64,000 nucleotides of DNA, from positions 124,001 to 188,000 of IMG/VR virus record IMGVR_UViG_3300042453_005404, one strand, 5' to 3'. The notes below the pieces were generated by a model that was given only the letters and a program-made list of their open reading frames with translations, was not told the DNA's origin and made no database searches. Numbering within the stretch: the stretch's first letter is position 1; each line of letters opens with the position of its first letter. This document shows, in pieces, positions 11,397 through 59,060 of this stretch. The translations under genes and the position numbers were made by a program.

Positions 11397-12056
11397 TTAG
11401 TCTTGATCTTTCAGAGCTTGTCTTAGTGCAGCACTTCTTGGTTGTTTATATTTTTGTCGTCGTTCCCAGCCATGCAAACGTTTGGCACGTAGGTTAATAT
11501 TTGAGATACTACCGCCCCAGAAAGCATATCCTACATGTTTTACTTCTGGATGTTTGGTTAAGGACTTCCAAACGTTTTTAGCTAAGATTGAGGTTGCACC
11601 TTCGCCGCCCCAAGCTTGGTTGCTAACAAGAATACCGTTATAGGTATTGGCGAGATATTTGAGAAGGTGGAGGTACATAGCTTTACCCAATCCTTCATCA
11701 CGGAAACGTTGAGAGTTCCAAGAATGTTGGACGCCCCAAAGTGTTACATTGTTTGGTTTGTTAGATATTTGTTTACGTAGTTTATCGAAGTCATTCCAAG
11801 CATTTGGTTCAAGGGTTAAAGCATCGTCGTCATTGTTGAAGTAGTTTGGGTTATAGAGAGCTTGTGTATCATCTACTTCGTGTGGGTGTTTTGTACTGAG
11901 AGGAATAGCGCATACGAATCCCACTTCACCTAGCTCTGGGTGATTGGCTGTAATCCAAACTTGTTTTTGGTTTTCACCGAGCGAGGTATCTTCTTTGGTG
12001 GAGATATCGATATCTTCAACTGAATGTTCTTCAAATATCAGAGCATATAGTTTCAT
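11397..12056 (-). CDS. tagged GNAT-like acetyltransferase (tandem paralog)
   Basis: MKLYALIFEE; FRDEGLGKAMY; ends near-identical to the 10715 gene. Confidence 0.65.
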   Translation of the reverse strand: MKLYALIFEEHSVEDIDISTKEDTSLGENQKQVWITANHPELGEVGFVCAIPLSTKHPHEVDDTQALYNPNYFNNDDDALTLEPNAWNDFDKLRKQISNKPNNVTLWGVQHSWNSQRFRDEGLGKAMYLHLLKYLANTYNGILVSNQAWGGEGATSILAKNVWKSLTKHPEVKHVGYAFWGGSISNINLRAKRLHGWERRQKYKQPRSAALRQALKDQD

Positions 12057-18527: not shown

Positions 18528-18569
18528 TTTAAATCACCTTACAAAGTAAATAGTTGAATTAATCAAAAA

Positions 18570-18917
18570 GGTGGACCATTTGGGTTCCGCCCCCAAGTCC
18601 TAAAAAGTATAACTTTTGATATGCTACGTGACCTATCTTGCTTAATACGACCACAATCTTTCAAGCAAACATTGTGGAAGTTTTATCGTGTATCTTGGTT
18701 GTTTTACTCGATATCCTTGAACAACCTTGTCTGATTAATCACACCCAATAAATCGTCCAGACGTAACAGTTTATAAGATGCTGTTTCAAGCTGCTAGGCT
18801 GAGAACAGGTTGTGCGTTATCGTTTGCACTTACGTTTTTGTTAGTTTTTATAGTGTATCCAACTACACTGTCACGCAATCAAACTTTATCCTTCTTAGTC
18901 GAATCTGTATATGGCCC
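18570..18917 (-). ncRNA. ssrA: tmRNA, tag (A)ANDNAQPVLSLAA*
   Basis: 5' GGGCCAT...GATTCGAC; 3' ATGGTCC-ACC with G3:U70; tag ORF 18827-18786 ends LAA-TGA. Confidence 0.92.
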
Positions 18918-23079: not shown

Positions 23080-26000
23080 CTAATCGATTTTGTAAATCTT
23101 GTTTTGATAAGCAGAGAATCCAAAATCCGATTTATCAAAAAGTCCAACCACAACGTCGTTCTGAATTAGATTCACTTCACCTCTCCAACCCCAAATAAAA
23201 CAAGTAACCTCTTTATTCGCTTCAGCAAACAAACGAAGCTTCATATACGTCTTACCTGTCTTAGTCTTAGCCAATCCAGCAGAAGCTACAATAGCCCAGT
23301 AATTACCCTTCTCACTCCAGTTATCGATAGACTCAAAACCAAGCTCATCAAGCTTTACCCGAGCTTCCTTCGACAACAGAAGATCGAAATCAACTGAACC
23401 AGCTAGCTCCTTGGTAAACTCCATCTTCTCTGCCTTGGTCCAATCCTCCATACCTTGAACCTCTGCAATAGCAGCTTCAAGAGGTTGAGTGATATCGTTG
23501 TTCTTCTTGCGTGAAGTAATACGCTTAAACTCATCATATCGATCAACAAGCACAGCATGGACTTGCTTGTAGTTCTTGAACAACTTACCATCACCAACGA
23601 TATCCATCGAGCCCAACGCTTCAAGCTTCACAAGAGCTGATAGAGCACTCTTGTTGAACTTGCTGTGTCTCCATGAACCATCTTGGTTAATCAGCAAGTC
23701 CCGCACAGAGTTATATGGACGGAACTGTTGAATCTCGCTTACAGCAGTTTTGCCAACGTGCTTGAGCGAACTAAAGCTTGGCACAAGAGTTTTGTTGAAA
23801 GTAGGATGTGAGATAACCTCATATTCAGACACGTTAATGTCTGGCTTGGTCAACTCATATCCAAGAGCCTTGGCTTCTTTAATGGCAATAGCCTTTGGAT
23901 CTTCCTTGCCTGTTACCTTACCCTTAGAGATTGCACAGTAATCAATATACGTAGCAATCCATTCATCTGGATAATAGGTGAGGAACCAAGCACATTGCCA
24001 TGTTGTGATTGCATAGCATACAGCGTGTGATTTGTTGAAGCTATAAGCGACGAGTTTTTCCATTTCATCAAAGATATCGCCGCAATCTTCTGCGTCGATA
24101 TTGTTGGCCTTTGCGCAAGCATCAATAAAGCTCTGACGAAGCTTGTTACGTTCTGCTTGTGCCTTTTCCTTGTTGTTGATTTCTTTCTTGGTAAATGCCT
24201 TACGGATACCATCTGTATCTTCAAGGGGAACCCCAGCAAGCTTATGATAAATCATTTGAAGCTGCTCTTGGAACACAAGGAGTCCAGAGGTTTCAGCAAA
24301 TACTTCCTTGAGAAGTGGATGCTTGTATACAACTGAATCTGGGTTTGCACGGTTATTCAAGAAGCGTTGATCTACCTTAAGAGATAGAGGACCGGGACGA
24401 AAGATAGACGTAGCCACAGCAATATCTGTGATAGACTTTGGCTTCATTTGACGCATGAAGTTTTGAGTCTTGTCGTTGATGAACTGGAAAATACCAGTGT
24501 AGTTACCCTTCCAGAAAACGTTCTCATAAACCTTTGGATCAGTCAATGGGTTGTTGTCGGGATGTAGATTATCCCAGAACCATTGCTTGATTTGCTTGAA
24601 CGTTGGATGCTTGATGCCTTGCTTTTGCAAGATACGTCGCACACAGTTCTCAAACATACGAAGTGTACCAAGACCAAGAATATCGAACTTGAGTAGACCA
24701 AACTCTTCAAGGTGACGAAAGTTTACACCTTCTGGCCATGGAGTTTGTAGCTCGCCGCCAGCCTTGATAAGAGGCATACCTTCACGGCTGTTCTCGGTAA
24801 TAATCACTCCTCCAGCGTGACGAGACAAACCACGCATTTGCTTGAATAGCACCTTAATGGTTGTTTGGAACTCTGGATAAGTTTCCATGAGTTGTTGGAA
24901 AGTAGGAGAATCATTCATTGCGGCTTCAAAGGTCATAACCCATGTGCCACGATCAAAGCCTTCTACTTGCTTGGCAACATCAAGCACTTCCTTTTCAATC
25001 TTACCCGTTGCTGCGTTAATCTCTTCGAAGGGAAGATTGTGCAAGCGAGCAACATCCTTGATAAGAGAACGAAGTTGCAACTGAGCGAAGTTGGTTACAG
25101 GAATAACGTTTTCTGAACCAAAGAACTCGATAAGAAGTTTTACTGCACGATCCCGGTCAGAGAAGTCAGAGTCAATATCTGGGAATGATTTTTTAGACTT
25201 AACCAAAAATCTAGCGAACAGAAGACCGAAACGAATCGGATCAACTTGTGTTATGTTCAACACATATGACAGAAGAGATCCAGCAGCAGAACCTCTGCCG
25301 TTACCGATAAGCATTTCCTTACCAACAATGTCCATGATCTTGTGATATGTGAGGAAATACTTAGCAAAGCGAAGATGCTTAATAGTATCAAGCTCATTCT
25401 TAAGACGCTTGATATAAACATCATCATGATTACGTCCTACGTTACGTAGACCATTAATCGCAAGCTGCACAAGTTGCTTGAAGGCTACGTCATCCTCAGA
25501 CATGCCCGCAGAAGCCTCTAGGAGTTTATCTAGAGCATTCTTCTCGATTAGACGACCAATGCCGGGAAGCTTTACAGAACGGTCAATAAAAACGTCTCCA
25601 ATAAGATCGTGAGCGATATCGTGAGTACGTTCAATAGCATCGCAAATAAGTTGATCGTCGGTGTACAGTTCTGGGTATGCTGCCTTTTGCTCAAGGTAGG
25701 TATTCCAAACTTGTTCTGCGTTCTTTGGATAAAGCTCGCACTTAAGCTCTTCAACCTTTTGTGGTAGAGTGTTTGGATCAATGGTACCCTTGGTTTTCGA
25801 AGCCCAAGCCATAGCCTTGTAGACTTCACGTTCCTTCCAATGGTTAGGATTGGAATAGTGAGAGTCAACAGTAACAACAAGCTTAAGACCTGTTTCCTTG
25901 GCAAGCTCCATGAGATAGAAGTTAACAAGGTGTTGAGCCGTTAGACGGTTCATCTGGAGTTCAAGGTAGTAGTTCTCCGGTCCACCAAGAGCATCAACAA

Positions 26001-26763
26001 ACTTATTGGTGATTGACCTAAGTTCTGTCATAATCCTGTCATAGTTGTGACGGTTTACACCCCAATCCTTCCAATCAACGGTTTGATCTTGATTGTCGAA
26101 GATCGTGCGAGCAAGACGACCACCAATACATGCAGAAGAGGCAATAACGTTACCTTTGGCATGACGCTTGAGCATATCAAAGTCCATGCGAGGATATCGG
26201 TAAAAGCCATCGATATAACTCTCGGAAACCATTTGAAAGATGCTCTTCAGCCCAGCATTGTTCTTTGGTAGAACAACAAGATGGTTACGTTGAGCGATAG
26301 GATCAGAAAACTTATTGTTCTTGGTTTCTGCTTCAATCTCTACAACGGTGCCACCTTCCTCTTCTTCCGAGGTTTCCTTGCCATGCTTGGCATCCATATC
26401 AGCTTCAGTATCAGCAAGTTCATTGCCAATAGATTCATTGCTGGCAAGCGCCTTGGCCAACGCCTTGTTGGCTTTTTGCATCTTGACAAGCTTATTCCAT
26501 TCAACAAATGAATCAATGAAATAAGCTTCAACACCGGGAATGGCCTTGAACTTTACACCTTTGTCTTTTAGCTTCTTTGCATGGATTTGTTGGTGAGAGA
26601 TACCTGCCATGCTACCATGATCGGTTAGAGCAAGCCCGTCCATACCATTTGAAATGGTAAAATCGATATGTTCTTGAGGTAGACCAATCGCATCCCCCAC
26701 GCTCCCAACTGTTGAATGTGCGTGAAGACCTACGAAACGAGATGGTTTGATTTGTGTAGTCAT
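23080..26763 (-). CDS. dnaE: DNA polymerase III alpha subunit (family C)
   Basis: PHP HAH, LTDHG, GRGSAAGSL, PDIDSD, KFDILGL, FNKSHA, C-terminal OB fold. Confidence 0.95.
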   Translation of the reverse strand: MTTQIKPSRFVGLHAHSTVGSVGDAIGLPQEHIDFTISNGMDGLALTDHGSMAGISHQQIHAKKLKDKGVKFKAIPGVEAYFIDSFVEWNKLVKMQKANKALAKALASNESIGNELADTEADMDAKHGKETSEEEEGGTVVEIEAETKNNKFSDPIAQRNHLVVLPKNNAGLKSIFQMVSESYIDGFYRYPRMDFDMLKRHAKGNVIASSACIGGRLARTIFDNQDQTVDWKDWGVNRHNYDRIMTELRSITNKFVDALGGPENYYLELQMNRLTAQHLVNFYLMELAKETGLKLVVTVDSHYSNPNHWKEREVYKAMAWASKTKGTIDPNTLPQKVEELKCELYPKNAEQVWNTYLEQKAAYPELYTDDQLICDAIERTHDIAHDLIGDVFIDRSVKLPGIGRLIEKNALDKLLEASAGMSEDDVAFKQLVQLAINGLRNVGRNHDDVYIKRLKNELDTIKHLRFAKYFLTYHKIMDIVGKEMLIGNGRGSAAGSLLSYVLNITQVDPIRFGLLFARFLVKSKKSFPDIDSDFSDRDRAVKLLIEFFGSENVIPVTNFAQLQLRSLIKDVARLHNLPFEEINAATGKIEKEVLDVAKQVEGFDRGTWVMTFEAAMNDSPTFQQLMETYPEFQTTIKVLFKQMRGLSRHAGGVIITENSREGMPLIKAGGELQTPWPEGVNFRHLEEFGLLKFDILGLGTLRMFENCVRRILQKQGIKHPTFKQIKQWFWDNLHPDNNPLTDPKVYENVFWKGNYTGIFQFINDKTQNFMRQMKPKSITDIAVATSIFRPGPLSLKVDQRFLNNRANPDSVVYKHPLLKEVFAETSGLLVFQEQLQMIYHKLAGVPLEDTDGIRKAFTKKEINNKEKAQAERNKLRQSFIDACAKANNIDAEDCGDIFDEMEKLVAYSFNKSHAVCYAITTWQCAWFLTYYPDEWIATYIDYCAISKGKVTGKEDPKAIAIKEAKALGYELTKPDINVSEYEVISHPTFNKTLVPSFSSLKHVGKTAVSEIQQFRPYNSVRDLLINQDGSWRHSKFNKSALSALVKLEALGSMDIVGDGKLFKNYKQVHAVLVDRYDEFKRITSRKKNNDITQPLEAAIAEVQGMEDWTKAEKMEFTKELAGSVDFDLLLSKEARVKLDELGFESIDNWSEKGNYWAIVASAGLAKTKTGKTYMKLRLFAEANKEVTCFIWGWRGEVNLIQNDVVVGLFDKSDFGFSAYQNKIYKID

Positions 26764-29893: not shown

Positions 29894-30964
29894 TCACTTC
29901 ATACAAAGATATCTGTCAGATACGTACTTCAAAGCAACTCGTCCATGCCGAGAATCAAATCGTTCGCCACGCTCTAGTTTCACAACAATACCTTCACGAA
30001 CCTTTTGCTTTGGAAAACAACTGTCTTCTTCAGCAAGTTTTTCTAGCATCGATGCATCAAGAGCTCCACGATAGAGAACAGGAACAGTTTCACAAATACC
30101 CGCACAGTAAACAGGATTGTCAAACATATCAGCGTTATCGACCCAACGGCCATGATCCAAAATGTCAAATGCCGCAAAGCCATATTGGCCTTGAACTTTT
30201 CCATAATGGAAATCTGATCCTTGAATGCTTGGCCCATATACTTCTCCGTATATAGCCATGCTTGGATGGTTCTTACACCATTCTTCAATCCAAGGATTTT
30301 GCTCAAGTGCAGTCCACCACACACAATCTGGAGCCGTAATGGTCTTTGTTACTTCGATACCATTTTCATCAATCCATGTAACGTCCTTTACATGAGTTCC
30401 CGGCTTCATCTTCCATGTTGTTCTGGAACCACAAAACATTTCACCGTTATGAAATACATAACGTGCGTTTGTGCCATGAATCTTTTCGGTAAGAATCACA
30501 CGTTCCCCCTCATTAAAGAGTTTGTGATACTTTTTGAATGATTCTAGATCATAGTGTGGCACTGGAATATCTGGACCCTTTGCTTGCACTCCAGAAGCCA
30601 TCCCAAAGCCTTTTGGAGCGGGTGGTTCGTACCGTTCTACCCCAAGTTGCTCCATAACGTTATCGCCCTCTACAGAGCCTTCTGGGGCCGGGATAAGCAG
30701 TCCGTATGAAGGTTCACCACGGAACCGACGCATGGTAATACGCAGACGAGGTTTGCCCTTGCCATCATCAAGGAACTTGAACTCGTTACGATCAAGAGGA
30801 ACAGTGTAATCTGGCTCGATATAAGCCATAAGATCATCAACTTTGTGTGCTCCTTTACGGATAACACATTGATATCCCCAAACGTTTGTGAGTTCTAGAG
30901 AATCAGCGTTGGGATGCTGGAGAATAGATTCGATGCGAATAACTTTGACTTCGTGTGTGCTCAT
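29894..30964 (-). CDS. RNA ligase, DRB0094/Rnl5 family
   Basis: N-terminal HPNADSL OB domain; TEKIHGTN, YGEVYG, FDI, REGIVVK, LK; leaderless promoter TTTAGT-17-TAAAGT-6-ATG. Confidence 0.9.
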   Translation of the reverse strand: MSTHEVKVIRIESILQHPNADSLELTNVWGYQCVIRKGAHKVDDLMAYIEPDYTVPLDRNEFKFLDDGKGKPRLRITMRRFRGEPSYGLLIPAPEGSVEGDNVMEQLGVERYEPPAPKGFGMASGVQAKGPDIPVPHYDLESFKKYHKLFNEGERVILTEKIHGTNARYVFHNGEMFCGSRTTWKMKPGTHVKDVTWIDENGIEVTKTITAPDCVWWTALEQNPWIEEWCKNHPSMAIYGEVYGPSIQGSDFHYGKVQGQYGFAAFDILDHGRWVDNADMFDNPVYCAGICETVPVLYRGALDASMLEKLAEEDSCFPKQKVREGIVVKLERGERFDSRHGRVALKYVSDRYLCMK

Positions 30965-31284: not shown

Positions 31285-31360
31285 TGGCTCCGCAAGTAGG
31301 GCTCGAACCTACAACCTAGCGGTTAACAGCCGCTCGCTACTGCCATTGAGCTATTGCGGA
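31285..31360 (-). tRNA. tRNA-Asn(GTT)
   Basis: cloverleaf, loop CTGTTAA, encoded CCA. Confidence 0.95.
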
Positions 31361-31378
31361 ATACGTATTTCTACGTAG

Positions 31379-31452
31379 TGGGTTGTGAGGGGGTCGAACC
31401 CTCGACCAAAAGGTTAAAAGCCTTCTGCTCGTACCAACTGAGCTAACAACCC
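31379..31452 (-). tRNA. tRNA-Lys(TTT)
   Basis: cloverleaf, loop CTTTTAA. Confidence 0.95.
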
Positions 31453-31462
31453 GTATTTTTAG

Positions 31463-31536
31463 TAGGCATGTCGGGGCTTGAACCCGAAACCTTTCGATTA
31501 TAAGTCGAATGCTCTAACCAGTTGAGCTACACGCCC
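31463..31536 (-). tRNA. tRNA-Ile(TAT)
   Basis: cloverleaf, TTCGA-CTTATAA-TCGAA. Confidence 0.9.
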
Positions 31537-31596
31537 GTTTCGTCTTTACCCTACTCTTATAATCTACCATCCTATATTATGATTCTCAAACTATTT

Positions 31597-31767
31597 TTAC
31601 TTTTTCTCGTTTGCCGCATCTTCTAGTATCTTTGCGGCATGATAACACAAGAATAGTAGATCTTGGGAAAAGTGTTTACCTAAACCTTCAGCGATTTGCT
31701 GTTGATTGTGCCCATACCGTATACGAGCTCTTATTGCTTTAATGCATTCATCAATGTCAGTATTCAT
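31597..31767 (-). CDS. small hypothetical protein
   Basis: MNTDIDECIKAIRARIRYG...; starts just after tRNA-Val. Confidence 0.5.
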   Translation of the reverse strand: MNTDIDECIKAIRARIRYGHNQQQIAEGLGKHFSQDLLFLCYHAAKILEDAANEKK

Positions 31768-31769
31768 AG

Positions 31770-31841
31770 TACAAGCAACAGGATTTGAACCTGTGACCTT
31801 CACCTTGTAAGGGTGACACTCTACCGCTGAGTTATGCTTGT
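31770..31841 (-). tRNA. tRNA-Val(TAC)
   Basis: cloverleaf, TCACC-CTTACAA-GGTGA. Confidence 0.9.
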
Positions 31842-31861
31842 AAATAAAACAAGTTCGGGAA

Positions 31862-32251
31862 CTAAACTTGATAGGTTATAACTTCATCCGGTAATACCAG
31901 TTTTTCCATTTCTGGAAACGAGCTCACAATCAGCCGCACGTCAACCAGTATATTTTTGGGTTCTACTGTTGCTACCTTGACATATATTGGTGGGCCTTCA
32001 AAAAAGCTGTCGATTACCATTTTCCAATCTGGCAGCCATGACAAAAGTTGTTTTTGTGGTTCTGATTCGATATTTTGAACATATCGAAATAGCGTTTTTG
32101 GTTTACTGGGTCTATATGCTTCAAGCTCTTTGATAACTGCCGGAGGTGGCAATCCTCTTGGTGCGTACTCCGTCCAATGTTGTAGCCATTTTTTAGTTTC
32201 TTCCGATAACGGGTTATCTTGTACGTCAAACAATATGGATTCTAACAGCAT
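31862..32251 (-). CDS. tagged putative ADP-ribosyltransferase (R-S-E-like) inside the tRNA cluster
   Basis: MLLESILFD; TLFRY...LLSW...ILVD...DEVI. Confidence 0.5.
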   Translation of the reverse strand: MLLESILFDVQDNPLSEETKKWLQHWTEYAPRGLPPPAVIKELEAYRPSKPKTLFRYVQNIESEPQKQLLSWLPDWKMVIDSFFEGPPIYVKVATVEPKNILVDVRLIVSSFPEMEKLVLPDEVITYQV

Positions 32252-32305
32252 ACAGCTATATATAGTATCTGTAATATACATTACAAACGAAATTCGAAAA
32301 AGAAG

Positions 32306-32377
32306 CGATCCCAACGGGGTTCGAACCCGTATGACAAGATTGAAAATCTTGTATCCTAACCGTTAGATGATGGGACC
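32306..32377 (-). tRNA. tRNA-Glu(TTC)
   Basis: cloverleaf, CAAGA-TTTTCAA-TCTTG. Confidence 0.93.
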
Positions 32378-32381
32378 AGAG

Positions 32382-32464
32382 TGGGCAGTGAAGGATTTGC
32401 ACCTACGAAGCCCGAAGGCAACAGATTTACAGTCTGCTCTCGTTGACTACTTGAGTAACTGCCC
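32382..32464 (-). tRNA. tRNA-Tyr(GTA)
   Basis: long variable arm, loop CTGTAAA. Confidence 0.92.
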
Positions 32465-32472
32465 AGAAACAG

Positions 32473-32557
32473 AGGAGAGTGTGAGATTCGAACTCACGGA
32501 CGGTTTCCCGCCTTCAGTTTTCAAGACTGACGTAATAGACCGCTCTACCAACTCTCC
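32473..32557 (-). tRNA. tRNA-Ser(TGA)
   Basis: long variable arm, loop CTTGAAA. Confidence 0.92.
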
Positions 32558-32591
32558 AAAACTATTCTATTGTCACAGAATCAATCGTTAG

Positions 32592-32665
32592 TCGGGGTAA
32601 AAGGATTCAAACCTTTGACCCTTCGCTCCCAAAGCGAATGCTCTATCAGACTGAGCTACACCCCG
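32592..32665 (-). tRNA. tRNA-Pro(TGG)
   Basis: CGGGGTG acceptor, loop TTTGGGA. Confidence 0.92.
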
Positions 32666-32862
32666 TTGTTTATCCGACCAAGTGATATGTTGTTTTGTAT
32701 CCTACTCGTTTTATTGTTCAATGTCCAAATCTCACCATTATTCATTGCACATACATACAACAAATCATGTTCTTGTGAGTAATCGATAACTAAAAAAGCG
32801 TATCCTTTCATTTGATCTGATACACGGATTATTGGTATCGTTGGATTTAGTTGAAGCATCAT
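32656..32862 (-). CDS. small phage protein (QLNPTIP...IDYSQEHDL)
   Basis: motif I recall as common in phages; 3' end overlaps the start of tRNA-Pro. Confidence 0.65.
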   Translation of the reverse strand: MMLQLNPTIPIIRVSDQMKGYAFLVIDYSQEHDLLYVCAMNNGEIWTLNNKTSRIQNNISLGRINNGV

Positions 32863-32866
32863 TTAG

Positions 32867-32947
32867 TGCAAGCGACGGGACTTGAACCCGTATGCCCGAA
32901 GGCGAGAGATTTTAAGTCTCCTGTGTATGCCATTCCACCACGCTTGC
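32867..32947 (-). tRNA. tRNA-Leu(TAA)
   Basis: variable arm, loop CTTAAAA. Confidence 0.93.
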
Positions 32948-32951
32948 AGAG

Positions 32952-33034
32952 TGCCCTCGACCAGACTTGAACTGGTACGCTCGTAAGAGCGGGAGATTTT
33001 GAGTCTCCTATGTCTGCCATTCCACCACAAGGGC
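32952..33034 (-). tRNA. tRNA-Leu(CAA)
   Basis: variable arm, loop CTCAAAA. Confidence 0.93.
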
Positions 33035-33564: not shown

Positions 33565-33639
33565 CGCCCCCAGCAGGATTCGAACCTGCATAATCCAGTT
33601 ACGGTACTACTGTTTAGAAGACAGAGCCGGTATAAGGGC
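33565..33639 (-). ncRNA. D-arm-less tRNA-Arg(TCT)-like RNA
   Basis: 7-bp acceptor GCCCTTA/TGGGGGC, perfect T-arm GCAGG-TTCGAAT-CCTGC, loop CTTCTAA, no D-stem; own promoter upstream. Confidence 0.75.
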
Positions 33640-48721: not shown

Positions 48722-48798
48722 TGGAGCCCATTGTCGGATTTGAACCAACGACATCAACTTTACAAAAGTTGCGCTCTAGCCAACTGAGCTAAACGGGC
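48722..48798 (-). tRNA. tRNA-Thr(TGT)
   Basis: cloverleaf, CAACT-TTTGTAA-AGTTG, encoded CCA. Confidence 0.93.
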
Positions 48799-48801
48799 TT
48801 A

Positions 48802-48873
48802 TATCACTCAAAGGATTTTCACCTTTATCTTTCCTCTAACAAAGAGGGGCTTTGAAAGTTAAGCTAGAGTGAT
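48802..48873 (-). ncRNA. non-canonical tRNA-Thr(TGT)-like RNA
   Basis: acceptor ATCACTC/GAGTGAT, D-stem GCTT/AAGC, CCTC-TTTGTTA-GAGG, T-arm AAAGG-TGAAAAT-CCTTT. Confidence 0.65.
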
Positions 48874-57314: not shown

Positions 57315-59060
57315 TTATCCTTCGTTGTTTATAACAACAACACAATTTGTTGTAAGTAGCAACCCAACAACTGAACAAGCGTGTTCGATTGCATAGCGTT
57401 CTACTTTGTGTGGATCGATAATACCTTGATCGATTAAGTCACAATATACATGACGGCTTGCATCGTAACCTTGACGCAAACGTTTATTTAACAAGCTTTC
57501 TGCTTTCTTTTCAACGAGATTTTCTGGACGGTTTGTATCACCAGCAATATCGTGTAGAAGATTTACAAGCTTTTCACTGTCATACGAACGCAGTTGGTTC
57601 ATGACAACATCTGAACTTTTTCCTGTGTTCTCAACAATAACTCTTAGTGGTTGACGGCAAGCTTCATAAATAACTTTTGCACCAGCAAGTTCATCCTCTG
57701 TCATGGTATGGCCTGCCATTTCTTTTTGTAGCCATTCTGAGGCATAGAAAAGAGCTGTACCACCACCGGGAAGGATTCCTTCTTGAACAGCCGCTATCGT
57801 GGCATTTAAAGCGTCTTCAACACGATCTTTTTTTTCAAAGATTTCTACTTCGGTGCTACCACCAACTTTGATAACAGCAATACCCCCAGCAAGTTTAGCA
57901 AGACGCTTTTTGGTATTCTCACGCTTCAAATCGTCTAAACCAACATTAGCAGCAAGCAATGTTCTTAGTTGATCAACACGTTCAGAGATTAAGTCTTTGC
58001 GTGAGCCAGCGTCATCACCAACAAGAGTTGTTGAGCTCTTAGTGATGATTGCTCGCTTACATTGTCCGAGATCTGATAGTGTTGCATTTTTGATTGACTT
58101 TTCTGAGCTGGCATCAAATACTTTGCCACCTGTTACAAGGGCGATATCAGAAAGAACATCAACACGATTTTCTCCGTAACTTGGAGCTTTGATTGCGCAA
58201 GTGAACAAAACACCTTTCATCTTGTTGACGATTAGAGTATGAAGAGCTTCACCTTCGATCTCATCACCAATGATTAACAAAGGCTTGTTAGCATTTGCAG
58301 CAAGTTCCAAAACCGGAAGAATTTCTTGTAGTGAAGATAGCTTTTTGTTAGTGATAAGAATGTAAGGATCATTGAGTTCTGCGGTCATCTTTTCTTGATT
58401 TGTAACAAAGTATGGACTTACAAATCCAGAATCAAACTGCATACCTTCTACAACATCCAAGCTTGTTTTAACACTTTTAGCTGGTTCGATGGTGATGATA
58501 CCATCTTGGCCAACTCTAGAAATAGCTTCGGAAAGAAGCACACCAATAGATCTATCGCCGTTAGCAGAGATTGTACCAATATTGATAATGTCTTCGTTGT
58601 TACGAACTGGGATAGCATGTTCTTTAAGCCACGAAATAACTTTTTCTGTTGCCCATTCCATTCCACGTTTGATTTCAATCGCAGAACGTCCTGTTGCAGT
58701 CATTTTGATACCTTGCTTAAGCATGGCATAACCAAGAACGGTGGCAGTGGAAGTGCCATCTCCAGCTTGTTCATTTGTTTTGCTGGCAATCTCTTTGATT
58801 AGTTCCGCTCCTAAACTTGGAAGCTTTGAACGTAGATTGATACTCTTGGCAACAGTAACACCATCTTTAGTGATTAATGGTGCTGTTTTACCATTGTCAA
58901 TAATAACATTGTGTCCACTTGGACCCATTGTGGATTTAACAGCTTTATAAAGGATTTCTGCACCTTCTAAAAGTTGGTTATGAGCTTCTTGACCGAAAGT
59001 AACTTCTTGTACAGAAGACTCGGTTGCAACCGGTTGATTTGTTTTGTTCATATGCATCAA
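57315..59060 (-). CDS. groEL: chaperonin GroEL
   Basis: TMGPSG, ITKDGVTVAK, GDGTSTAT, EGMQFD.G, KAPSYG, GGIAVIKVG, PGGG. Confidence 0.95.
   Translation of the reverse strand: MMHMNKTNQPVATESSVQEVTFGQEAHNQLLEGAEILYKAVKSTMGPSGHNVIIDNGKTAPLITKDGVTVAKSINLRSKLPSLGAELIKEIASKTNEQAGDGTSTATVLGYAMLKQGIKMTATGRSAIEIKRGMEWATEKVISWLKEHAIPVRNNEDIINIGTISANGDRSIGVLLSEAISRVGQDGIITIEPAKSVKTSLDVVEGMQFDSGFVSPYFVTNQEKMTAELNDPYILITNKKLSSLQEILPVLELAANANKPLLIIGDEIEGEALHTLIVNKMKGVLFTCAIKAPSYGENRVDVLSDIALVTGGKVFDASSEKSIKNATLSDLGQCKRAIITKSSTTLVGDDAGSRKDLISERVDQLRTLLAANVGLDDLKRENTKKRLAKLAGGIAVIKVGGSTEVEIFEKKDRVEDALNATIAAVQEGILPGGGTALFYASEWLQKEMAGHTMTEDELAGAKVIYEACRQPLRVIVENTGKSSDVVMNQLRSYDSEKLVNLLHDIAGDTNRPENLVEKKAESLLNKRLRQGYDASRHVYCDLIDQGIIDPHKVERYAIEHACSVVGLLLTTNCVVVINNEG

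What the first reader, a model, noticed from the sequence alone, without database searches (positions are those of the whole stretch)
33565..33639. tRNA-like RNA with no D-arm and a D-loop-like sequence relocated behind the anticodon arm
The minus strand reads GCCCTTA TACCGG CT CTGT CTTCTAA ACAG T AG TA CCGTA ACTGGATTAT GCAGG TTCGAAT CCTGC TGGGGGC G. The acceptor and T-arm are intact and the Arg(TCT) loop is canonical. The D-arm is replaced by an extended, bulged anticodon helix (TAC-C-GG pairing with CCGTA). The AACTGGAT segment typical of tRNA-Arg D-loops appears in the variable-loop position, where its GG could still dock on the T-loop. The length is tRNA-like (75 nt) and it has its own promoter (TTTACG-17-AATACT). 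Inference: a rewired tRNA fold acting as a functional tRNA, a nuclease decoy or a synthetase ligand, not a decayed gene. I recall similar sequences in other phage tRNA clusters but cannot verify that here.
Basis: partly seen in the sequence, partly recalled or inferred. Interest (0 to 1): 0.72.

Follow-up and report, generated by a model that had tools for sequence, protein, structure and literature searches.

The report
Phage tRNA with a rewired D-arm
This 75-base gene is very probably a working arginine tRNA whose D-arm pieces sit in a different order along the chain than in every textbook tRNA, and it belongs to a large, almost entirely unannotated class of such tRNAs found in phages, including common E. 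coli phages.

Summary
It is not a decayed gene.

- **Family.** I collected 134 distinct relatives from viral contigs. Several hundred GenBank phage records also hold copies, from phages of Escherichia, Salmonella, Klebsiella, Pseudomonas, Streptomyces, Mycobacterium, Agrobacterium and Bacteroides. Almost none are annotated.
- **Architecture.** All share an acceptor stem, U8-A9, one free base and a 3-bp helix strand. Then come base 26, a normal anticodon arm and a linker of mostly 3-5 nt. The other helix strand follows, then a full D-loop (U-A-R..GG..A), one pyrimidine and a normal T-arm.
- **Structure evidence.** The 3-bp helix covaries: CGG/CCG, CUC/GAG, CCC/GGG, CAC/GUG, CAG/CUG and others. 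The base two after the helix covaries with the base before the T-stem, A-U versus G-C, like the 15-48 Levitt pair.
- **Permutation.** Moving the block 10-21 back to its canonical place makes ARAGORN of 126 as normal tRNAs. It of 126 as they stand.
- **Function evidence.** The base after GG is A in 96 of 97 Arg members, matching the ArgRS determinant A20, and U in Ile-type members. In large phage tRNA clusters, family members fill exactly the missing Arg anticodons.
- **This phage.** It has no other tRNA-Arg, and AGA makes up 32% of its Arg codons.

Expression, charging and the 3D fold remain untested. I found no prior description.

The parts
33633..33639 (-). Acceptor stem, 5' strand (GCCCUUA; tRNA positions 1-7)
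   Evidence: Pairs with 33566-33572. All 7 pairs covary in the 111-sequence alignment A3 (98.7% paired).
33631..33632 (-). U8 A9, invariant in the family
Evidence: U-A in 111 of 111 aligned members. The two cannot be told apart, because nothing varies.
33630..33630 (-). Free or bulged base (C; counterpart of position 22)
   Evidence: Any base occurs in the family (U 78, C 25, A 5, G 3), and a few members have 2 nt here. This fits a bulge or a tolerated 13-22 mismatch.
33627..33629 (-). CGG: 5' strand of the 3-bp helix that replaces the D-stem (counterpart of positions 23-25)
   Evidence: Pairs with CCG at 33602-33604. It was never part of any search pattern, yet is complementary in nearly all members. 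Pair types at the middle pair: GC 80, UA 18, CG 17, AU 10. At the inner pair: GC 80, CG 31, AU 2, UA 2.
33626..33626 (-). Single base between the helix and the anticodon stem (C; position 26)
   Evidence: Always one base in the 126 parsed members (C 65, A 36, U 15, G 10).
33609..33625 (-). Anticodon arm: stem UCUGU/ACAGU (first pair is a U-U mismatch) and loop CUUCUAA with anticodon UCU at 33616-33618
   Evidence: U33 (required by the parser) and A37 (not required) are present in all 126 parsed members, and the stem covaries. Anticodon UCU reads AGA, which is 32% of Arg codons in this phage.
33605..33608 (-). Linker AGUA (counterpart of variable-loop positions 44-47)
   Evidence: Linker length is 3-5 nt in 96 of 126 members and 8-12 nt in two sub-families.
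33602..33604 (-). CCG: 3' strand of the 3-bp helix (counterpart of positions 10-12)
   Evidence: See the CGG entry. RNAalifold predicts this helix unaided on A3.
33591..33601 (-). D-loop equivalent: U13 A14 A15 C U G18 G19 A20 U U A21
   Evidence: U-A is invariant in 111 of 111 aligned members. GG is in all 126 parsed members, but every collecting pattern and the parser required it. A21 is 125 of 126. The base after GG is A in 96 of 97 Arg members and U in 24 of 27 Ile/CAU members.
33590..33590 (-). U directly before the T-stem (counterpart of position 48)
   Evidence: Covaries with the base two after the helix (position 15): A-U 98, G-C 18, G-G 7, A-C 2, G-U 1. Fisher p about 6e-23, not corrected for relatedness.
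33573..33589 (-). T-arm: GCAGG / UUCGAAU / CCUGC
   Evidence: Canonical T54-psi55-C56-R57-A58 loop. The stem is 99.6% paired and covaries.
33565..33572 (-). Acceptor stem, 3' strand (UGGGGGC), and discriminator G; no genomic CCA (next bases are CUA)
   Evidence: 75 of 126 relatives do encode CCA.

Best explanation
The gene encodes a functional elongator tRNA-Arg(UCU). It is the only tRNA-Arg in this roughly 260-kb freshwater jumbo phage.

**Proposed fold.** It belongs to a phage-borne class of tRNAs in which two adjacent internal blocks of the cloverleaf have swapped places along the chain. The block 'D-stem 5' strand + D-loop' (positions 10-21) now lies after the block 'D-stem 3' strand + 26 + anticodon arm + 44-47', instead of before it.

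- The D-stem becomes a 3-bp helix that flanks the anticodon arm and stacks on it.
- The D-loop leaves that helix, presents G18-G19 to the T-loop and R15 to Y48, and runs straight into the T-stem.
- Every canonical position has a counterpart, so the usual L-shape and core can form with a different strand path.

**Proposed function.** RNase P and the 3' processing and CCA enzymes would see the intact acceptor/T-arm stack. ArgRS would read A20, C35 and U36. The tRNA then decodes AGA for the phage.

**Shown versus inferred.** Shown here are the family, the helices, the 15-48 covariation, the isotype-specific bases, the anticodon complementarity and the phage enrichment. The 3D fold, processing, charging and decoding are inferred.
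For: **Family**
- 134 distinct relatives score above all ordinary tRNAs with model R1.

**Structure**
- The helix CGG/CCG covaries. There are four Watson-Crick pair types at each of two positions, it is 98.2% paired, and 0 of 500 shuffles reach the observed values.
- The variants were collected with a pattern that constrained only the 3' strand.
- Within single sub-families the helix appears as CGG/CCG, CAG/CUG, CUC/GAG, CUU/AAG and CAC/GUG.
- RNAalifold finds the same structure unaided.
- Positions 15 and 48 covary: A-U 98, G-C 18, G-G 7, others 3. The scan for G15 left position 48 free.
- U8 and A14 are in 111 of 111 aligned members and A21 in 125 of 126, all unconstrained by the search patterns. 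G18 G19 are in every member but were required by the searches.
- Un-permuting test: ARAGORN of 126 native sequences and 120 of 126 after the block is moved back, 117 with the same anticodon. Random rotations of the same segment give 24-37.

**Function**
- Position 20 is A in 96 of 97 Arg members and U in 24 of 27 Ile/CAU members. The discriminator is A in all Ile/CAU members. A37 is 100%. Genomic CCA occurs in 75 of 126.
- Only 10 of 111 members share an anticodon with a canonical tRNA in the same locus.
- In five large clusters (L117, L101, L068, L090, L015) the set ACG/CCG/CCU/UCU is completed exactly by family members, and a different anticodon is the rewired one in different phages.
- The Wildcat homologue has CCU in a GC-rich phage, against UCU here.
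- This genome has 13 canonical tRNAs and none for Arg. AGA is 32% of its Arg codons.
Against: - There is no RNA-level evidence.
- No 3D model or structure probing is available.
- The U8-A9 and U13-A14 bases never vary, so their pairing mode is open.
- The window copy has a U-U mismatch at the top of the anticodon stem and two G-U pairs in the acceptor stem.
- Discriminators of the Arg members are mixed (G 37, A 30, U 26, C 4).
- The covariation statistics are not corrected for phylogeny.
- ArgRS and ribosome acceptance of a changed strand path has no precedent that I could test.
Confidence: 0.8

Rival explanations
1. A stable tRNA-shaped RNA that is not used for decoding. It could be a decoy for host tRNA-cleaving defence nucleases, a ligand that titrates ArgRS or another tRNA-binding protein, or a primer or regulator.
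For: The odd architecture and strong enrichment in phages would fit an arms-race role: at least 119 viral contigs against 24 contigs in 185,579 species genomes for the same pattern. An RNA ligase gene sits next to the tRNA cluster in this phage.
Against: A decoy need not keep A37 (kept in all 126 members), isotype-specific position 20 and discriminator, or genomic CCA. Nor need its anticodons fill exactly the gaps left by canonical tRNAs in the same cluster. The anticodon also tracks genome GC content.
Confidence: 0.1
2. A D-armless tRNA with a type-II-like variable arm. The CC of CCG would pair with the GG of UGGA as a small hairpin, and the 5' UAYCGG would be an unpaired replacement loop, as in mitochondrial tRNA-Ser.
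For: Ordinary phage tRNA-Leu and tRNA-Ser genes with a CCGUAAUGG variable arm were picked up by the same first pattern. The minimum-free-energy fold of the single sequence draws this 2-bp hairpin.
Against: GG is present in every member while the preceding triplet changes to GAG, GGG, GUG, CUG, AAG, AGG or UCG. In 41 of 126 members the hairpin cannot form, whereas the 5' strand changes in step. The hairpin cannot be extended beyond 2 bp. The T-loop and GG are kept, unlike in D-armless mitochondrial tRNAs (PMC9427863).
Confidence: 0.03
3. The transcript is cut and re-ligated, for example by phage RNA ligase, to restore the canonical order of segments, so that the mature tRNA is ordinary.
For: Circularly permuted tRNA genes of algae and one archaeon are restored to the standard form by processing (PMC3978253). 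This phage encodes an RNA ligase at 29894-30964.
Against: Here the 5' and 3' ends are already in the normal place. Restoring the order would need three breaks and two ligations inside the molecule. There is no bulge-helix-bulge motif, and bacteria lack the splicing endonuclease. The helix and tertiary partners covary in the permuted arrangement, and the linker and tail lengths fit a direct fold.
Confidence: 0.03
4. A decayed or rearranged tRNA pseudogene without function.
For: It has a low Rfam score (35 bits), is missed by ARAGORN, has a U-U mismatch in the anticodon stem and has no convincing promoter.
Against: The same architecture is conserved in phages of at least seven bacterial phyla or classes. 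Compensatory changes occur in all four helices and in a tertiary pair.
Confidence: 0.02

Closest known systems
Canonical bacterial and phage tRNA-Arg(UCU) (Rfam RF00005)
   Same: 7-bp acceptor stem, 5-bp T-stem with a TpsiC loop, 5-bp anticodon stem with U33/A37, and total length. U8, A14, R15, G18, G19, A20, A21 and Y48 are all present. It sits in a phage tRNA cluster and supplies a codon the phage uses often.
   Different: There is no D hairpin between the acceptor and anticodon arms. The two D-stem strands flank the anticodon arm instead. The D-loop follows the anticodon arm and is joined directly to the T-stem. There is no separate variable loop. Rfam score is 35 bits against 41-75 for the canonical tRNAs of this window and 42-72 in related loci.
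D-armless mitochondrial tRNA-Ser(AGY/GCU) (Kuhle et al. 2022, PMC9427863)
   Same: No D hairpin, and the replacement strand stacks into an extended anticodon helix.
   Different: The mitochondrial tRNA has lost the D-loop, the tertiary core, the TpsiC motif and the G19-C56 contact, and it is short and flexible. The phage class keeps all of these and has normal length (73-83 nt).
Circularly permuted tRNA genes of Cyanidioschyzon and other algae and of one archaeon (Soma 2014, PMC3978253)
   Same: tRNA segments are encoded in a non-standard order.
   Different: There the 3' half precedes the 5' half, and processing through a circular intermediate restores a standard cloverleaf. Here the ends are normal, the swap is internal (not a rotation of the whole molecule), and the mature RNA is expected to keep the swapped order.
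Non-circularly permuted hammerhead ribozymes (Eckert et al. 2023, PMC10085705)
   Same: Conserved blocks of a structured RNA occur in an order that is not a circular rotation, presumably with the same 3D core. That paper states that no such permutation was known in natural RNAs before it.
   Different: A different RNA class. The hammerhead case was validated by cleavage assays, whereas this one rests on comparative analysis only.
Engineered circularly permuted yeast tRNA-Phe (Pan, Gutell and Uhlenbeck 1991; recalled from memory, not checked here)
   Same: It shows that the tRNA core can fold with altered backbone connectivity.
   Different: It is artificial, permutes the whole molecule, and was not tested as a decoder. 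The phage class is natural and keeps the normal termini.

Membership tests
tRNA (Rfam RF00005; canonical cloverleaf) | Match to the family model at or above the gathering score | tested here: met
   35.1 bits against 29 for the window copy. Of 14 other members tested, 6 were listed at 32.7-38.6 bits and 8 were not listed at E <= 0.01.
tRNA (Rfam RF00005; canonical cloverleaf) | 7-bp acceptor stem with discriminator, 5-bp T-stem with a 7-nt TpsiC loop, and 5-bp anticodon stem with a 7-nt loop (U33, purine 37) | tested here: met
   All three helices are 98-99.6% paired with compensatory changes in A3. A37 is in 126 of 126 (U33 was required by the parser). The window copy has a U-U at pair 27-43.
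tRNA (Rfam RF00005; canonical cloverleaf) | D-arm hairpin (10-13/22-25 closed by the D-loop) between the acceptor and anticodon arms, and a variable loop 44-48 joining the anticodon stem to the T-stem | tested here: not met
   The Rfam alignment deletes the D-arm and inserts 16 nt. ARAGORN of 111. The strands and the loop exist, but in swapped order.
tRNA (Rfam RF00005; canonical cloverleaf) | Tertiary-core nucleotides U8, A14, R15-Y48, G18 G19, A21 and T54-A58 | tested here: met
   All are present at the sequence level. Positions 15 and 48 covary. That they form the canonical contacts in 3D is inferred.
tRNA (Rfam RF00005; canonical cloverleaf) | Processed to about 76 nt with CCA, aminoacylated and used on the ribosome | not testable with these tools
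   No usable RNA data.
Bacterial tRNA-Arg identity (A20, C35, U36/G36; established for E. coli ArgRS, from my own knowledge) | A at position 20 of the D-loop, and C35 | tested here: met
   The base after GG is A in 96 of 97 members with Arg anticodons, against U in 24 of 27 Ile/CAU members. All Arg anticodons have C35.
D-armless mitochondrial tRNA | D-arm replaced by a short loop; loss of the G18G19 / TpsiC elbow contacts and of the core; shortened length | tested here: not met
   GG, the TpsiC loop and the core bases are retained, and length is 73-83 nt. Features of the mitochondrial type are taken from PMC9427863.
Type II tRNA (long variable arm) | A base-paired variable arm of at least 3 bp together with a normal D-arm | tested here: not met
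   The candidate CC/GG hairpin cannot form in 41 of 126 members, and no D hairpin exists.
Circularly permuted tRNA gene | The 3' half is encoded upstream of the 5' half, with a bulge-helix-bulge junction and maturation through a circular intermediate | tested here: not met
   The acceptor 5' and 3' strands are at the ends of the gene in the normal order. The definition is from PMC3978253.
Natural non-circular permutation of a structured RNA | The same conserved blocks in an order that is not a rotation, with pairings and conserved bases preserved | tested here: met
   Swapping the blocks back restores a detectable cloverleaf in 120 of 126. The helices and the 15-48 pair covary in the permuted order.
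Natural non-circular permutation of a structured RNA | Function of the permuted form shown experimentally | not testable with these tools
   This needs charging, decoding or structural experiments.

The most novel reading that the evidence does not exclude
This would be the first natural class of functional tRNAs whose mature chain is a non-circular permutation of the cloverleaf, with positions 10-21 and 22-47 swapped. The changed strand path would itself be adaptive for phages. For example, it could make their Arg and Ile decoders poor substrates for host tRNA-directed defence nucleases, or less dependent on host core modifications, while ArgRS/IleRS, EF-Tu and the ribosome still accept them.
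Probability: 0.2. Interest if true: 0.93.

Novelty: new variant of a known kind. Interest (0 to 1): 0.84.

Why it matters
**For tRNA biology.** The cloverleaf order of arms is treated as universal outside animal mitochondria. A natural, widespread tRNA class that keeps every core nucleotide but threads the chain differently would show that the translation machinery reads the shape and not the strand path. It would also be only the second known case of a non-circular permutation in a natural RNA (PMC10085705).

**For annotation.** Hundreds of sequenced phages, including Felix-O1-like, phi92-like and jumbo coliphages, carry a tRNA-Arg or tRNA-Ile that current annotation misses or labels 'tRNA-OTHER'. 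Phage tRNA inventories and codon-usage arguments are therefore biased.

**For testing and use.** Members occur in easily handled E. coli phages, so charging, decoding and structure are directly testable. The fold could also serve as a scaffold for orthogonal tRNAs.

Tried and rejected
- **RNA evidence.** Two runs labelled RNA-Seq that hold this phage turned out to be 'probably DNA'. They gave only contigs of a related strain and no information on ends or expression.
- **Promoter and terminator.** The A/T-rich inverted repeat downstream overlaps the start of the next ORF.
- **Single-sequence folding.** Not significant.
- **Variable-arm hairpin model.** Rejected by covariation.
- **Pseudogene reading.** Rejected.
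- **Literature.** Ten full-text searches combined phage or viral tRNA with D-arm loss, permuted tRNA, extended anticodon stem and atypical tRNA. They found no description of this class. The 2020 review of non-canonical tRNAs does not contain the words 'phage' or 'virus'. A 2023 survey of viral structured RNAs mentions tRNA-like motifs, one overlapping tRNA-Arg calls, but its supplement is not held. Subscription journals are not covered, so prior description cannot be excluded.
- **Flanking ORFs.** Pfam gave nothing for the two ORFs beside the gene.
- **Complex prediction.** I did not run a prediction with ArgRS, because the tool gives no verdict for RNA.

Full report
**1. What is in the window.** It has a 7-bp acceptor stem, U-A, CCGG, C, a stem-loop with CUUCUAA (anticodon UCU), AGUA, CCGU, AACUGGAUUAU, a textbook T-arm, the acceptor 3' strand and discriminator G.
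- ARAGORN finds 13 tRNAs in the window but not this one.
- Rfam's tRNA model matches end to end at 35.1 bits (gathering score 29) only by deleting the D-arm and inserting 16 nt after the anticodon arm.
- The proposed promoter hexamers are present but match only 8 of 12 consensus positions and were not called.
- The gene lies between two co-directional ORFs.

**2. It has many relatives.**
- A blastn search found an unannotated 73-nt homologue inside the tRNA cluster of Mycobacterium phage Wildcat and its kin. That copy has anticodon CCU instead of UCU and a compensatory U-A to G-C change in the anticodon stem.
- I scanned IMG/VR with a pattern taken from the 3' half (CCGUAA..UGG followed closely by a T-arm). 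An ordinary tRNA cannot match this unless it has a long variable arm.
- A covariance model (R1) separates the family (43-92 bits, with two outliers at 39-41) from ordinary tRNAs (40 bits or less).
- After two further scans I had 134 distinct members, of which 126 could be parsed segment by segment.

**3.
- In the first set the 5' CGG was never part of the pattern, yet it was present in 63 of 63.
- I then scanned for copies whose 3' strand is not CCG, leaving the 5' strand free. The 5' strand had changed in step.
- The combinations seen are CGG/CCG 74, CUC/GAG 17, CCC/GGG 10, CAG/CUG 6, CAC/GUG 4, CGA/UCG 2, CCU/AGG 1 and CUU/AAG 1, plus a few with one mismatch.
- On the 111-sequence alignment A3 the helix is 98.2% paired. 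The middle pair occurs as GC 72, UA 18, CG 14, AU 7, with no unpaired case. None of 500 shuffles reaches the observed values.
- RNAalifold predicts the same helix without being told.
- Within one sub-family (long linker, tail AGUAU) the helix occurs in five versions, so the changes are repeated events.
- The alternative of a small CC/GG variable-arm hairpin fails. GG is present in every member (the searches required it) while the triplet before it changes, and the hairpin cannot form in 41 of 126.

**4. The relocated segment behaves as a D-loop, and the whole is a block swap.**
- After the 3' helix strand every member has U-A-R, then 0-3 nt, GG, one base, a few more bases, an A (125 of 126) and one base that abuts the T-stem.
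- The R and that last base covary: A with U in 98, G with C in 18, G with G in 7, and other combinations in 3. The scan that collected the G cases left the partner free. This is the pattern of the R15-Y48 Levitt pair.
- The positions map as follows:
  - The free base after UA is 22.
  - The 5' helix strand is 23-25, followed by 26.
  - Then comes the anticodon arm (27-43).
  - The linker, usually 3-5 nt, is 44-47.
  - The 3' helix strand plus U is 10-13, followed by 14-21, then 48 and the T-arm.
- Every canonical position has a counterpart, and the length (73-83 nt) is normal.
- In a standard tRNA the strand 39-43, base 44 and strand 10-13 already follow each other along one side of the anticodon/D coaxial stack. 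U8, A14 and A21 share a layer next to the 15-48 layer. From textbook tRNA geometry, the three new junctions therefore look closable. This is inference, not a computation.
- As a test I moved the block 10-21 back in silico. ARAGORN of 126 native sequences and 120 of 126 rearranged ones, 117 with the same anticodon. Random rotations of the same segment give 24-37.

**5. Evidence that it decodes.**
- Anticodons in the 126 parsed members:
  - Arg: UCU 62, CCU 21, CCG 5, UCG 5, ACG 4.
  - Ile: UAU 21, GAU 1.
  - CAU 5 (Ile2 or Met).
  - CUU 1 and UAC 1.
- The base after GG is A in 96 of 97 Arg members and U in 24 of 27 Ile/CAU members. A20 is the main D-loop determinant of bacterial ArgRS (my own knowledge of the E. 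coli system).
- The discriminator is A in all Ile/CAU members. A37 is universal. 75 of 126 encode CCA.
- Only 10 of 111 members share an anticodon with a canonical tRNA in the same locus.
- In five clusters of 22-32 tRNAs the four usual Arg anticodons are completed exactly by one or two rewired members, and which anticodon is rewired differs from phage to phage. If anticodons were drawn at random this would happen about once in 2300 times.
- The window's own genome record (260 kb, about 70% complete) has 13 canonical tRNAs, no tRNA-Arg and one family member. AGA is its second most used Arg codon at 32%.

**6. Distribution and annotation.**
- GenBank phages hold the CUC/GAG subtype in 269 records (Felixounavirus, phi92-like Justusliebigvirus, jumbo Asteriusvirus, Klebsiella and Proteus phages). 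Other subtypes occur in Pseudomonas, Streptomyces, Agrobacterium, Rhizobium, Stenotrophomonas, Limnohabitans, Mycobacterium and crAss-like Bacteroides phages.
- The feature column is almost always 'none'. Occasionally it reads 'tRNA-OTHER', 'tRNA-Phe', 'tRNA-Leu' or an overlapping hypothetical CDS.
- The same subtype-specific pattern gives 24 contigs in one genome each of 185,579 prokaryote species. About 21 are real, and most of those lie inside tRNA gene clusters, several of them dense arrays of 13-27 genes.

**7. What is not known.**
- I obtained no usable RNA data, so expression, end processing, charging and decoding are inferred.
- The 3D fold is a model.
- Why phages keep this form is open. 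It could be a neutral alternative spread by gene exchange among tRNA clusters, or an adaptation against host tRNA-directed defences. Nothing here tests that.

**8. Comparison and novelty.**
- It works like a tRNA-Arg. It meets the tRNA family's score and every defining feature except the order and hairpin nature of the D-arm and the variable loop.
- It is not a D-armless mitochondrial-type tRNA, because those have lost the D-loop, core and TpsiC contacts (PMC9427863).
- It is not a type II tRNA.
- It is not a circularly permuted tRNA gene, because those restore the standard tRNA by processing (PMC3978253).
- The nearest concept is the non-circular permutation reported for hammerhead ribozymes in 2023. 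That paper stated that no such permutation was otherwise known in natural RNAs (PMC10085705).
- Ten literature searches found no description of this tRNA class, though the library does not cover most subscription journals.
- I therefore rate it a new variant of a known kind, with high interest.

Noticed in passing
window 18569-18917 (-): A full-length tmRNA gene (Rfam RF00023, 71.3 bits against a gathering score of 47) sits in this phage. Wildcat, which carries a homologue of the rewired tRNA, also has one next to its tRNA cluster (L001:768-1185).
   Followed up: no
window 29894-30964 (-): An ORF of 356 aa with an RNA ligase domain (PF09414, 2e-21) and a PHA02142 OB fold lies directly downstream of the tRNA cluster (31285-33034). 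It is a possible tRNA-repair function.
   Followed up: no
L045:5533-5614 (+): A family member with an 8-nt anticodon loop (UGUUCUAA) on a regular 5-bp stem. This is the kind of loop seen in frameshift-suppressor tRNAs. The same contig carries two further rewired members (UCG, UCU).
   Followed up: partly
L091:11003-11080 (-); L237:7364-7441 (+); L008, starting at 11632 (+): Rare rewired members carry Lys (CUU), Val (UAC) and Ile (GAU) anticodons, so the architecture is not restricted to Arg and AUA-reading Ile.
   Followed up: partly
e.g. L131:11187-11265 (-), L023:3193-3274 (-), L091:10185-10265 (-): Some sub-families have an 8-12-nt linker between the anticodon stem and the helix (CGUUAACC, GGAUUAUAAUG). 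Others have a 9-10-nt tail ending GAAAAY between GG and the T-stem. What the extra bases do is unexplained.
   Followed up: no
L335, L336, L344, L352 (Bradyrhizobium); L337 (Brucella cytisi); L342 (Mesorhizobium): Bacterial chromosomes carry rewired tRNA-Arg genes. In Bradyrhizobium they have anticodon ACG and lie inside arrays of 8-22 tRNA genes, which may be prophage or mobile tRNA arrays. In the Brucella and Mesorhizobium loci only one canonical tRNA lies nearby.
   Followed up: partly
L021:981-1183 (-): A group I intron match (RF00028, 65 bits) lies about 1 kb from a rewired CAU member in a viral contig.
   Followed up: no
window 48722-48873 (-): Two tandem tRNA-Thr(UGU) genes lie 3 nt apart. 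The second scores only 40.8 bits with Rfam.
   Followed up: no
window 57315-59060 (-) and 23080-26763 (-): The phage encodes a GroEL-type chaperonin (PF00118, 2e-61) and a DnaE-type DNA polymerase III alpha subunit. Public runs place it in lake and other freshwater metagenomes.
   Followed up: no
L073:14740-14815 (-), contig GVMAG-M-3300027770-28: A member lies on a 14.9-kb contig binned as a giant-virus MAG. This may be a mis-binned phage contig.
   Followed up: no
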